This document shows, piece after piece, positions 12,061 through 13,940 of a DNA stretch of 64,000 nt (position 1 is the first letter of the stretch; every line of letters starts with the position of its first letter). The stretch lies in assembly GCA_053919585.1 (NCBI GenBank), contig CM132807.1; one strand, written 5' to 3'. Origin of the DNA: Euprymna scolopes (lineage: Eukaryota). The notes beneath the pieces are model-generated. The model saw nothing but the letters and a program-made list of their open reading frames with translations. It made no database searches and was not told the origin of the DNA. A program made the position numbers and the translations under genes.

Positions 12061-12083
12061 TAGCTACAATCATTTATAGTGCT
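12061..12083 (+). repeat. Left target-site-duplication-like direct repeat
   Basis: TAGCTACAATCATTTATAGTGCT versus TAGGTACAATCAGTTATAGTGCT at 13918-13940 (21/23 identical). Confidence 0.8.
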
Positions 12084-12120
12084 TGGCCTTCGGGCCATGA
12101 TCAAAATGTAGTATCTGTTC
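12081..12120 (+). ncRNA. U2 snRNA 5' fragment (divergent and truncated; head of a retroposed element)
   Basis: GCTTGGCCTTCGGGCCATGATCAAAATGTAGTATCTGTTC aligns to U2 GCUUCUCGGCCUU.UGGCUAAGAUCAA(A)GUGUAGUAUCUGUUC. Stem I is kept as UGGCC-UUCG-GGCCA and the branch-point recognition sequence GUAGUA is intact. Confidence 0.8.
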
Positions 12121-13917
12121 CGGCAGATGCTGCAAGCTATGACTAGCTATGACTAGCAAAGACCAGATGTGGGGGCAACCCCACATGCCTGACCATTAAC
12201 CAGCTCCCATTTCCCACCTCTCGGGAGCTGGTCCCCTTTTTCCCTTCTCCCTCCCTTCACTCCTCACATTAAAAATCGGCCTTGTGCCTAATTTGCTCGG
12301 TGGGGGAGCAAATAAATACCATCTGTTCCGGCAGATGCTGCAAGCTATGGCTATCTATGACTAGCTATGACTAGCAAAGACAAGATGTGGGGGCAACACC
12401 ACATGCCTGACCATTAACCAGCTCCCATTTCCCACCTCTCGGGAGCTGGTCCCCTTTTTCCCTTCCCCCTCCCTTCACTCCTCACATTAAAAATTGGTCT
12501 TGTGCCTAATTTGCTCGGTGGGGGAGCAAATAAATACCATCTGTTCCGGCAGATACTGCAAGCTATGACTAGCTATGACTAGCCAAGACCAGATGTGGGG
12601 GCAACCCCACATGCCTGACCATTAACCAGCTCCCATGTCCCACCTCTCGGGAGCTGGTCCCCTTTTTCCCTTCCCCCTCCCTTCACTCCTCACATTAAAA
12701 ATCGGCCTTGTGCCTAATTTGCTCGGTGGGGGAGCAAATAAATACCATCTGTTCCGGCAGATACTGCAAGCTATGACTAGCTATGACTAGCCAAGACCAG
12801 ATGTGGGGGCAACCCCACATGCCTGACCTTTAACCAGCTCCCATGTCCCACCTCTCGGGAACTGGTCCCCTCTTTCCATTCCCTTCACTCCTCACATTAA
12901 AAATCGGCCTTGTGCCTAATTTGCTCGGTGGGGGAGCAAATAAATACCATCTGTTCCGGCAGATGCTGCAAGCTATGGCTATCTATGACTAGCTATGACT
13001 AGCAAAGACAAGATGTGGGGGCAACCCCACATGCCTGACCATTAACCAGCTCCCATTTCCCACCTCTCGGGAGCTGGTCCCCTTTTTCCCTTCCCCCTCC
13101 CTTCACTCCTCACATTAAAAATTGGTCTTGTGCCTAATTTTCTCGGTGGGGGAGCAAATAAATACCATCTGTTCCGGCAGATACTGCAAGCTATGACTAG
13201 CTATGACTAGCCAAGACCAGATGTGGGGGCAACCCCACATGCCTGACCATTAACCAGCTCCCATGTCCCACCTCTCGGGAGCTGGTCCCCTTTTTCCCTT
13301 CCCCCTCCCTTCACTCCTCACATTAAAAATCGGCCTTGTGCCTAATTTGCTCGGTGGGGGAGCAAATAAATACCATCTGTTCCGGCAGATACTGCAAGCT
13401 ATGACTAGCTATGACTAGCAAAGACCAGATGTGGGGGCAACCCCACATGCCTGACCTTTAACCAGCTCCCATGTCCCACCTCTCGGGAACTGGTCCCCTC
13501 TTTCCATTCCCTTCACTCCTCACATTAAAAATCGGCCTTGTGCCTAATTTGCTCGGTGGGGGAGCAAATAAATACCATCTGTTCCGGCAGATACTGCAAG
13601 CAAAGACCAGATGTGGGGGCAACCCCACATAGCTGACCTTTAACCAGCTCCCATTTCCCACCTCTCGGGAGCTGGTCCCCTGTTTCCCTTCCCCCTCCCT
13701 TCACTCCTCACATTAAAAATTGGCCTTGTGCCTAATTTGCTCGGTGGGGGAGCAAATAAATACCATCTGTTCTTCAGATGCTGCACTTCCATTTCTTGTT
13801 CTCTTTCGGTGGAGGAGAAATCCTTCACGACTGAGACAATTTTTATTTTTGTACCTTTTCTCCACGTTAAAAAACGACCCTGGTGTCTAACTCTGTCCCG
13901 TGGGGAGGCATTGTAAA
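12084..13917 (+). mobile_element. U2-headed composite retroposed insertion: U2 fragment, 8 tandem units and a unique ~150-bp tail
   Basis: Bounded by the 19-23 bp direct repeat. GC-rich relative to its flanks and non-coding. Confidence 0.7.
12114..13765 (+). repeat. Tandem array of eight 188-218 bp structured units
   Basis: Units start (TCTGTTC) at 12114, 12322, 12540, 12748, 12950, 13168, 13376 and 13578. Lengths are 208, 218, 208, 202, 218, 208, 202 and 188 bp. Confidence 0.97.
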
Positions 13918-13940
13918 TAGGTACAATCAGTTATAGTGCT
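13918..13940 (+). repeat. Right target-site-duplication-like direct repeat
   Basis: Matches 12061-12083. Confidence 0.8.

What the first reader, a model, noticed from the sequence alone, without database searches (positions are those of the whole stretch)
12107..12134. Each unit carries an antisense copy of the U2 branch-point recognition region
Seen: shortly after each junction lies CAGAT(A/G)CTGCA, complementary (with G-U pairs) to U2 TGTAGTATCTG over 11 nt. At the first junction it can fold back and sequester GUAGUA. In the last segment CAGATGCTGCACTT (~13775-13788) could pair with canonical U2 AAGUGUAGUAUCUG over 14 nt. The A/G variation between units keeps pairing (U-A or U-G). Inference: this may be a target-recognition or self-processing leader that folds with co-transcribed U2, by analogy with R2 5' ribozymes that include 28S target sequence. 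It could also be a multivalent U2 decoy or a snap-back integration scar.
Basis: partly seen in the sequence, partly recalled or inferred. Interest (0 to 1): 0.75.

Follow-up and report, generated by a model that had tools for sequence, protein, structure and literature searches.

The report
Inverted U2 fragment leading U2-targeting retroposons
The short stretch complementary to the branch-point-binding part of U2 snRNA is real, but it is the leftover of an inverted copy of the U2 5' end that heads a family of U2-gene-targeting retrotransposons and their short derivatives; it makes a hairpin with the U2 piece they carry, and nothing found here shows a ribozyme, a U2 decoy or selection for pairing.

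Summary
Observation confirmed. Window 12107-12134 reads TGTAGTATCTG / TTCCGG / CAGATGCTGCA, an 11-bp fold-back if G-U pairs count. The 3' arm recurs at all nine unit starts, and at 13775-13788 it is 14 nt long.

The element is a flanked composite retroposon. It has a U2-like head, eight ~208-bp units and a tail unit. It belongs to a young family with hundreds of copies on many chromosomes.

In this genome's real U2 gene array sit intact LINEs with endonuclease and reverse-transcriptase domains. They are joined to U2 nt 1-47 on the U2 strand. Their first ~41 nt align end to end with the reverse complement of U2 nt 1-43. The "antisense branch-point region" is therefore the loop-side end of an old inverted copy of the whole U2 head, kept by the short derivatives.

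I infer a single twin-priming-type inversion of a U2-LINE co-transcript as the origin.

The hairpin is predicted to be stable (z -3.4 to -5.6). There is no covariation, no Rfam ribozyme match, and the 4-7-nt loop cannot hold an HDV-like fold. RNA evidence could not be obtained.

Earlier notes of this scan on other DNA of this genome had already found the U2-headed retroposon and its LINE.

The parts
12065..12083 (+). Left copy of the flanking direct repeat (TACAATCATTTATAGTGCT). The target-site duplication core is 12069-12081. The leading TACA is shared with the element's 3' end.
   Evidence: The same 19 nt, with one mismatch, recur at 13922-13940. Other copies have 8-14-bp duplications.
12082..12120 (+). 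U2-like head, about U2 nt 8-46. It holds stem-loop I (CTTGGCC..GGCCA) and the branch-point recognition region, and ends ...GTAGTATCTGTTC.
   Evidence: Rfam U2 match of 22 bits, below the gathering score. Compared with the canonical U2 read from the gene array. Heads of the same kind occur in 25 or more other copies.
12107..12117 (+). 5' arm of the hairpin: U2 sequence TGTAGTATCTG, including GTAGTA.
12118..12123 (+). Loop TTCCGG. TTC still matches U2 nt 44-46. Other lineages have TTCTTAA, TTCTTAC, TTCTT or TTCT here.
12124..12134 (+). 3' arm, the antisense segment CAGATGCTGCA. Its CAG corresponds to U2 nt 51-53. The rest is the start of the inverted U2 copy.
12113..13772 (+). Eight tandem units of about 208 bp (spacings 208, 218, 208, 202, 218, 208, 202, 187). 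Each unit is ATCTGTTC + CGG + leader + body + LINE-like 3' tail ending AAATAAATACC. The leader copies are at 12332-12342, 12550-12560, 12758-12768, 12960-12970, 13178-13188, 13386-13396 and 13588-13598.
   Evidence: Tandem Repeats Finder. Positions. The 3' part of the unit resembles the LINE 3'UTRs, p<=0.003.
13773..13925 (+). Tail unit, a diverged relative of the repeat unit. It begins TT + CAGATGCTGCACTT (13775-13788, the 14-nt antisense arm) and ends ...AAATAGGTACA. It supplies the 3' end used when the whole composite was copied.
   Evidence: tail versus unit 3' part, p=0.003. The same tail closes at least 14 other copies.
13922..13940 (+). Right copy of the flanking direct repeat (TACAATCAGTTATAGTGCT).

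Best explanation
The 11-14-nt antisense segment is the first part of the 5' leader shared by a family of U2-gene-targeting, Keno-like non-LTR retrotransposons and by their short non-autonomous derivatives. The LINEs carry an apurinic-type endonuclease and a reverse transcriptase. The derivatives are the ~208-bp unit, the tail unit and a ~1.2-kb element.

In the parent LINEs the leader is a decayed inverted copy of the whole U2 head, nt 43 back to nt 1. The short derivatives keep only its loop-side 11-14 nt.

Inferred origin: one twin-priming-type event. The top-strand end of the cut U2 target (...TTATCAG, U2 nt 53) paired by its CAG with CUG (nt 41-43) of a U2 RNA or of the U2 head of a U2-LINE co-transcript. 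It was then extended to the RNA 5' end, which placed an inverted U2 head between the target and the LINE.

These elements are copied together with the upstream U2 head. The inverted piece has therefore been inherited ever since, and head and leader pair into a stable hairpin in the RNA and in the cDNA.

Inferred role, if any: a stable 5' fold that keeps the target-homologous U2 head on the template. This resembles the 5' module of R2, where the cDNA of the head can anneal to the upstream target. I do not think it is a catalytic or trans-acting device.
For: Shown:
- The family is dispersed and young: at least 369 candidate matches, 92 scored, most at 97-100% identity.
- Copies are flanked by 8-14-bp duplications and start with U2 heads.
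- The genome has a 764-bp-period U2 gene array.
- In that array sit LINEs with open ORFs carrying endonuclease, reverse-transcriptase and zinc-finger domains, on the U2 strand. They belong to two lineages whose ORF2 proteins are 72% identical.
- Their 5' junction is U2 nt 1-47 followed by CAG....
- The first ~41 nt of both LINE lineages align end to end with the reverse complement of U2 nt 1-43. L043: 30 of 44 columns identical, shuffle p=0.0002, and 0 of 1380 other windows of the same LINE score as high. L044: 27 of 42, p=0.003, 7 of 1380.
- The rest of the two 5'UTRs is unalignable apart from one short conserved patch.
- In several lineages U2 identity runs on through the loop (TTCTTAT or TTCTTAA) to the CAG, so the inverted part begins right after U2 nt 53.
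- The unit's 3' part matches the LINE 3'UTRs.
- The unit's 3' end abuts TCTGTTC, the published Keno/Utopia site (PMC4640811).
- The hairpins are predicted to be stable: z -4.0, -5.6, -3.4, -3.0 and -2.1.

From the literature: upstream target sequence plus a stable 5' fold helps R2 5' junction formation and template survival (PMC3774820, PMC11331408).
Against: - The twin-priming origin is an inference from anatomy. A DNA snap-back that happened to stop near nt 1 would look the same.
- L044's similarity to inverted U2 is modest.
- No RNA data exist here, so co-transcription from a U2 promoter and folding in vivo are not shown.
- Heads of dispersed copies differ from canonical U2 and start at about nt 5-11. 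The master copies and their promoters are therefore unknown.
- In the short derivatives, all three lineage-level changes at arm positions 4-14 keep pairing (A6G, A9G, C10T), while single-copy changes mostly break it (3 of 10 keep it). This hints at some constraint (p about 0.07) that a pure relic would not predict.
- The LINE partner that carries exactly the CAGATGCTGCACTT leader was not found.
Confidence: 0.55

Rival explanations
1. The hairpin is a selected, required part of the retrotransposition machinery. Two versions are possible. It could be a 5' module recognised by the LINE protein. Or the palindrome could put a second copy of the endonuclease site (CAGA|T) on the top strand about 14 nt from the bottom-strand nick, guiding second-strand cleavage and nested insertions.
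For: - At least six leader sublineages keep 13-14 of 14 pairs while the loop varies in length and sequence (4-7 nt).
- Lineage-level changes at arm positions 4-14 are all wobble-keeping.
- The leader stays recognisable in two LINE lineages whose 5'UTRs are otherwise unalignable.
- The arrays can be read as serial insertions into head-leader sites.
- Counting a TACA shared with the element's 3' end, four of the six flanking duplications measured are 13-14 bp. That matches the spacing from the published U2 nick to the CAG.
Against: - There is no covariation. The covariation score is 0.084, against 0.091 in shuffles.
- A head change (T to C at GTAGTA) is compensated in only 1 of 3 copies.
- Abundant subfamilies carry pair-breaking changes next to the loop (TATATG, CCG).
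- In L043, about 8 of 10 substitutions relative to perfect inverted U2 break pairs.
- Between close sublineages the arm is no better conserved than the next 14 nt.
Confidence: 0.17
2. The segment acts in trans on U2 snRNA. Array transcripts would carry many unpaired antisense sites, since internal units lack the 5' arm. These sites could sponge U2 snRNP, tether the RNA near U2 genes, or hold U2 RNA so that the reverse transcriptase jumps onto it and adds a new head.
For: - Internal units have free 11-nt complements, eight of the nine copies in this array.
- U2 RNA does seem to be used as a template in this genome. LINE or unit 3' ends abut U2 nt 1-5, and a copy of U2 nt 1-64 is fused to a LINE-like tail.
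- Recurrent addition of snRNA heads is known in SINEU elements (PMC4494074).
Against: - Heads are family-specific and non-canonical. Their type follows the preceding unit, which fits inheritance rather than fresh capture from U2 snRNA.
- The junction is constant within a lineage.
- No expression data exist.
- A strong U2 sponge expressed from hundreds of loci should be harmful to the host.
Confidence: 0.1
3. The U2 head and leader form part of a self-cleaving RNA, R2-like, that trims the co-transcript.
For: In many R2 elements the P1 helix of the 5' ribozyme pairs upstream 28S sequence with element sequence (PMC3774820). The unit is rich in hairpins.
Against: - No Rfam ribozyme matched at permissive thresholds in the window element, the LINEs, or the other family loci scanned (L007, L048, L062).
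- The 4-7-nt loop leaves no room for the HDV-like P2/P3 strands.
- Retrotransposed copies retain the head.
Confidence: 0.04
4. The complementarity is a chance match.
For: It is short, and G-T positions are needed to reach 11 bp.
Against: - It extends to 14 nt in other sublineages.
- It sits exactly at the U2 junction in every lineage.
- It continues as a 41-nt homology to inverted U2 in the LINEs.
- Shifted registers pair in at most 47% of cells, against 86% in the proposed register.
Confidence: 0.01

Closest known systems
Keno (Tx1-clade, apurinic-endonuclease LINEs that insert into U2 snRNA genes; Kojima and Fujiwara 2004, as cited in PMC4640811 and PMC4494074)
   Same: - LINEs with endonuclease and reverse-transcriptase domains sit inside U2 genes in the U2 orientation.
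- The short units are followed by U2 sequence starting at TCTGTTC, the site published for Keno and Utopia.
- Tandem insertions occur in the U2 site.
   Different: - The sampled LINE copies have their 3' end next to U2 nt 1 or nt 22, not nt 39/40.
- An inverted U2 head at the 5' end is not mentioned in the two Kojima papers read.
- Clade membership by reverse-transcriptase phylogeny was not tested.
R2 5' module: an HDV-like ribozyme whose P1 helix uses upstream 28S sequence (PMC3774820; PMC11331408)
   Same: - Element sequence is complementary to the target sequence just upstream of the insertion.
- Upstream target sequence is kept on the template RNA.
- The 5' junctions are uniform and inherited.
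- There is a stable 5' fold.
   Different: - Here the structure is a simple hairpin with a 4-7-nt loop.
- No ribozyme signature is present.
- The head is not removed.
- The complement is an inverted copy of the whole upstream target, not a 7-nt P1' strand.
L1 twin-priming 5' inversions (Ostertag and Kazazian 2001; from my own knowledge, not read here)
   Same: [quoted passage not shown]
   Different: - Here the inverted part is the co-transcribed target (U2) sequence, not LINE sequence.
- The product became the founder of active lineages instead of a dead copy.
SINEU, the snRNA-headed SINEs of crocodilians (PMC4494074)
   Same: - U2-derived 5' head.
- Recurrent or multiple heads.
- Probable Tx1-type partner.
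- No internal polymerase III promoter.
   Different: - No poly(A) tail.
- The body is built of tandem LINE-derived units.
- The head is joined at the LINE's own U2 insertion site.
- An antisense U2 leader is present.
U6/L1 and other snRNA-LINE chimeric retrocopies made by template switching (cited in PMC4494074 and PMC4476161)
   Same: An snRNA piece is fused 5' of a LINE-derived 3' part and flanked by duplications. One such case here is U2 nt 1-64 plus a tail in L033.
   Different: Those chimeras carry the snRNA in sense only and arise independently each time. Here the junction and the antisense piece are inherited.

Membership tests
Keno-like U2-targeting non-LTR retrotransposon (parent LINE and derivatives) | ORF2 with an apurinic-type endonuclease and a reverse transcriptase | tested here: met
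   Pfam Exo_endo_phos, RVT_1 and zf-RVT in the 1145- and 1149-aa ORFs of L043 and L044.
Keno-like U2-targeting non-LTR retrotransposon (parent LINE and derivatives) | Inserted in U2 snRNA genes in a fixed orientation | tested here: met
   Three copies lie in the 764-bp U2 array, each with U2 nt 1-47 upstream and U2 downstream. The 5'UTR query hits many more places in U2-array regions of contig C9.
Keno-like U2-targeting non-LTR retrotransposon (parent LINE and derivatives) | 3' junction at the published site, with the U2 flank starting TCTGTTC (nt 39 in the numbering of PMC4640811) | tested here: inconclusive
   Met for the ~208-bp units (ACCA|TCTGTTC). The three LINE copies sampled abut U2 nt 1 or nt 22 instead. 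This can be explained by priming on U2 RNA followed by a template jump, but that was not shown.
Keno-like U2-targeting non-LTR retrotransposon (parent LINE and derivatives) | Reverse transcriptase groups with the Tx1 clade in a phylogeny | not tested
   No reference Tx1/Keno sequences were at hand. The large protein search was not spent on this.
SINEU (snRNA-headed SINE) | 5' head derived from U1 or U2 snRNA | tested here: met
   The head matches U2 nt ~8-46.
SINEU (snRNA-headed SINE) | 3' poly(A) tail | tested here: not met
   Copies end ...AAATAGG(TACA) without an A run.
HDV-like self-cleaving ribozyme (R2 type) | Nested double pseudoknot, with the P1 strands separated by the P2 and P3 strands (at least 23 nt in R2) | tested here: not met
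   The arms are separated by 4-7 nt. No HDV-like, hammerhead, twister or other ribozyme family matched at E<=10 in the window region or at E<=1 in L043, L044, L062, L007 and L048.
HDV-like self-cleaving ribozyme (R2 type) | Self-cleavage of the co-transcript | not testable with these tools
   This needs in vitro transcription. Indirectly, retroposed copies keep the head.
Conserved RNA helix (structure under selection) | Compensatory changes across copies | tested here: not met
   On 71 junctions, 86.3% of cells are paired. The covariation score is 0.084 against a shuffle mean of 0.091, and 463 of 500 shuffles are at least as high. The 5' arm is fixed U2 sequence, so the test has little power.
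Twin-priming 5' inversion | The inverted segment begins at the target-duplication end and stops at the RNA 5' end | tested here: inconclusive
   The start after U2 CAG 51-53 and the end at the complement of U2 nt 1-3 both fit. The event itself cannot be observed.

The most novel reading that the evidence does not exclude
The leader is a working antisense guide. By pairing with U2 snRNA, or with the unwound U2 target DNA, it brings the element RNA to U2 genes and positions the reverse transcriptase to copy a U2 head. Array transcripts with many free sites would then also titrate U2 snRNP. This would be an RNA-guided step in the targeting of an endonuclease-type LINE.
Probability: 0.07. Interest if true: 0.8.

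Novelty: new variant of a known kind. Interest (0 to 1): 0.45.

Why it matters
U2-targeting LINEs (Keno, Utopia) and snRNA-headed SINEs are known. A 5' leader that is an inverted copy of the upstream target, inherited through LINE lineages and their deletion derivatives, is not described in the papers I could read.

If the reading is right, it gives three things:
- A concrete example of a twin-priming product that stayed active.
- An explanation of why these elements always show an "anti-branch-point" motif.
- A natural system, with intact LINEs in a U2 array and hundreds of near-identical recent copies, for testing how the 5' ends of endonuclease-type site-specific LINEs are joined.

It also removes a tempting but unsupported story of a U2 decoy or ribozyme.

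Tried and rejected
- Known ribozymes or other RNA families: nothing but U2 matched.
- Covariation across 71 junctions: none.
- Strict inverted-repeat search: it misses the hairpin because of the G-T positions.
- Fresh capture of heads from U2 snRNA at each copying: rejected as the main process. Head type follows the preceding unit and is non-canonical.
- Unit 5' body versus LINE 5'UTR: similarity not significant, p about 0.3.
- Higher conservation of the arm than of its neighbours among close sublineages: not seen.
- Composite-copy element downstream of family F: no LINE ORF in 7.9 kb.
I did not resend trimmed letters.
- Two searches of the genome with the Rfam U2 family failed on the server. 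I used a short pattern instead.
I then read it from the fetched locus.
Full report
**1. The observation**

The window reads TGTAGTATCTG (12107-12117), TTCCGG (12118-12123) and CAGATGCTGCA (12124-12134). The two 11-mers pair over their whole length if the two G-T positions count as G-U. As strict DNA complementarity it is 9 of 11, which is why the repeat finder reports nothing.

CAGAT[A/G]CTGCA occurs nine times on the + strand and never on the - strand, against 0.03 expected. Each copy lies just after a unit junction. At 13775-13788 the motif is CAGATGCTGCACTT, which is complementary over 14 nt to AAGUGUAGUAUCUG of this genome's own U2.

Only the first junction has the full U2 arm. Internal junctions keep ATCTG and can form 5 bp in cis.

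RNA folding of 12082-12140 gives U2 stem-loop I plus this hairpin at -25 kcal/mol, z = -4.0.

**2. What the element is**

Tandem Repeats Finder gives eight copies of a ~208-bp unit at 12113-13772. Upstream lies a U2-like head at 12082-12120 (Rfam U2, 22 bits, below threshold). Downstream lies a diverged tail unit at 13773-13925. The whole is flanked by a 13-19-nt direct repeat.

The unit has at least 369 candidate matches on many of the large contigs of this 5.9-Gb genome, most of those scored at 97-100% identity. In 30 fetched loci the same plan recurs: a U2 head, a variable number of units, the same tail, and flanking duplications of 8-14 bp. It is a young, dispersed, non-autonomous retroposon.

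**3. The parent**

The canonical U2 22-mer occurs 1186 times, mostly in a 764-bp-period array on contig C9. Gaps in the period hold ~7.6-kb insertions on the U2 strand, with two open reading frames. ORF2 carries endonuclease, reverse-transcriptase and zinc-finger domains. ORF1 has a zinc knuckle in one lineage. Two lineages were sampled (L043; L044 and L045), with ORF2 72% identical.

Upstream of each LINE is U2 nt 1-47, followed by CAG.... Downstream, the LINE 3' end abuts U2 nt 1 (L044, L045) or nt 22 (L043).

The 3' part of the window's unit matches the LINE 3'UTRs: a pyrimidine tract, then GGCCTTGTGCCTAATTT, a stem-loop and AAATAC. The match has p<=0.003.

The unit's 3' end is followed by TCTGTTC, the U2 flank published for Keno and Utopia insertions (PMC4640811). 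Functionally these are Keno-like elements and their deletion derivatives. Clade membership was not tested.

Two earlier notes of this scan on other DNA of the same genome reached the same general picture (s1-247338, s1-272093). I arrived at it independently and checked it on the loci above.

**4. What the antisense segment is**

Across 77 head-leader junctions the 3' arm falls into a few lineage types:

| Lineage | Loop | 3' arm | Pairs |
|---|---|---|---|
| Unit as in the window | TTCCGG | CAGAT[A/G]CTGCA, then AGC | 11 |
| Unit variant | TTCCGG | ...CACTT | 14 |
| Tail unit | TTCTT | ...CACTT | 14 |
| ~1.2-kb family (about 600 junction matches) | TTCTTAA | ...CACTT | 14 |
| Relatives of the ~1.2-kb family | TTCTTAA or TTCTTAC | CCGATG... 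or TACATGCTGTACTT | 13 |

In the lineages with loop TTCTTAA or TTCTTAT, U2 identity continues through the loop to the CAG (U2 nt 51-53). The non-U2 part therefore begins right after nt 53 and reads as the complement of nt 40, 39, 38 and so on.

In the LINEs the similarity does not stop after 14 nt. The first ~41 nt align end to end with the reverse complement of U2 nt 1-43:
- L043: 30 of 44 columns identical, shuffle p = 0.0002, and none of 1380 other 50-nt windows of the same LINE scores as high.
- L044: 27 of 42 identical, p = 0.003, and 7 of 1380 windows score as high.

The rest of the two 5'UTRs cannot be aligned with each other except for one short patch.

Minimum-energy folds pair almost the whole U2 head with the leader in both LINEs (z -2.1 and -3.0). 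In the short elements they give the 14-15-bp hairpin (z -3.4 and -5.6).

The derivatives have lost the rest of it.

**5. How it probably arose (inference)**

Three features fit a twin-priming-type inversion:
- The inverted copy starts where a top-strand nick about 14 nt from the published bottom-strand nick would lie. Counting a TACA shared with the element's 3' end, four of the six duplications measured are 13-14 bp.
- It starts with a 3-nt microhomology, CAG to CUG at nt 41-43.
- It ends at the complement of U2 nt 1-3, which is the 5' end of U2 RNA and not any landmark in the DNA.

In such an event the nicked top strand primes on the U2 part of a U2-LINE co-transcript, or on U2 snRNA, and is extended to the RNA end. 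The product, sitting behind a U2 promoter and head, would have founded the present lineages.

There is other evidence that reverse transcriptase copies U2 RNA here. LINE and unit 3' ends are joined to U2 nt 1-5. A canonical U2 nt 1-64 is fused to a LINE-like tail between direct repeats. A plain DNA snap-back cannot be excluded.

**6. Does it do anything?**

Points for some constraint:
- Six sublineages keep 13-14 pairs while the loop changes.
- The three lineage-level changes at arm positions 4-14 (A6G, A9G, C10T) all give G-U pairs, whereas single-copy changes keep pairing in only about 3 of 10 cases. The contrast is weak, p about 0.07.

Points against:
- The formal count on 71 junctions shows 86% of cells paired (at most 47% in shifted registers) but no covariation: 0.084 against 0.091 in shuffles.
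- A T-to-C change in GTAGTA is matched by G in only one of three copies.
- Abundant subfamilies carry unpaired changes beside the loop.
- In L043 most substitutions relative to perfect inverted U2 break pairs.
- Between close sublineages the arm is no better conserved than the next 14 nt.

On this evidence the segment is an inherited scar that unavoidably forms a stable hairpin with the co-copied head.

The most plausible benefit comes from R2. There, retained upstream target sequence gives uniform 5' junctions (PMC3774820), and a thermodynamically stable 5' fold improves template performance (PMC11331408). By analogy, the hairpin would be a stable 5' structure that keeps the target-homologous head on the template. 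This is inference.

**7. Rivals**

- Self-cleavage. No ribozyme family matched at permissive thresholds in the window element, both LINEs and three related loci. A 4-7-nt loop cannot hold an HDV-like core, since R2 ribozymes need at least 23 nt between the P1 strands (PMC3774820). Retroposed copies keep the head.
- Trans pairing with U2 snRNA, as a decoy, a tether or a guide for template switching. This is not excluded, and internal units do carry free sites. However, heads are non-canonical and follow the preceding unit, which fits inheritance. No expression data could be obtained.
- A required structure or a second endonuclease site on the top strand. This remains possible at modest odds.
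- Chance is excluded.

**8. Limits**

I did not resend parts of that stretch, so there is no RNA evidence and read laying was not used.
The U2 5' region is nearly identical across animals, so I note that after the only database query I sent was LINE 5'UTR sequence without U2 letters.
Only three LINE copies and about 65 loci were studied.
- The LINE with exactly the CAGATGCTGCACTT leader was not found.
- The organism was not identified.

**9. Verdict**

Its best explanation is structural and historical: an inverted U2 head at the 5' end of a Keno-like family. It is not a U2-directed device. I rate it a new variant of a known kind, of moderate interest.

Noticed in passing
L044 and L045 (G000:C9 ~168.92 and ~168.95 Mb); L043 (C9 ~168.88 Mb): Apparently intact U2-targeting LINEs lie in the real U2 array. 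The architecture is U2 nt 1-47 | LINE | complete U2 from nt 1 (or from nt 22 in L043). It looks as if first-strand synthesis began on U2 RNA at the nick and then jumped from the U2 5' end to the LINE 3' end.
   Followed up: partly
L033 (G000:C3 ~63.38 Mb): Canonical U2 nt 1-64 is fused to a short tail carrying the LINE 3' motif and ending AAATAAATAC, between ~15-bp direct repeats. This is a U2/LINE-tail chimeric retrocopy.
   Followed up: no
L055-L064, L047-L050: A ~1.2-kb non-autonomous family has about 600 junction matches genome-wide. It is preceded by 73-bp modules of 'U2 head + first 30 nt of leader', and is often followed by a second head and another element. No LINE ORF lies within 7.9 kb downstream (L065).
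   Followed up: partly
window 12129, 12132 and the same arm positions in all copies: The two positions that make the arm imperfect are A-to-G changes in UAC context. A-to-I editing of the RNA hairpin before reverse transcription would give this pattern, and could also explain why A and G alternate at position 6 in several sublineages. Untested.
   Followed up: no
L009, L004, L017, L021 and other heads: Stem-loop I of the carried U2 heads is often a perfect hairpin, unlike canonical U2. Some copies show paired changes, for example CTTGACC..GGTCAAG. Part of this is CpG decay of CTCGGCC.
   Followed up: no
L031, L034, L035: Several U2 paralogues lie outside the main array. They have different stem IIb/III sequences and their own upstream regions.
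   Followed up: no
window, whole: There is no ORF of 150 aa or more anywhere in the 64 kb. The window contains 1012 N. Other first-stage notes on hammerhead ribozymes at about 27.3 kb and 44.8 kb were not examined.
   Followed up: no
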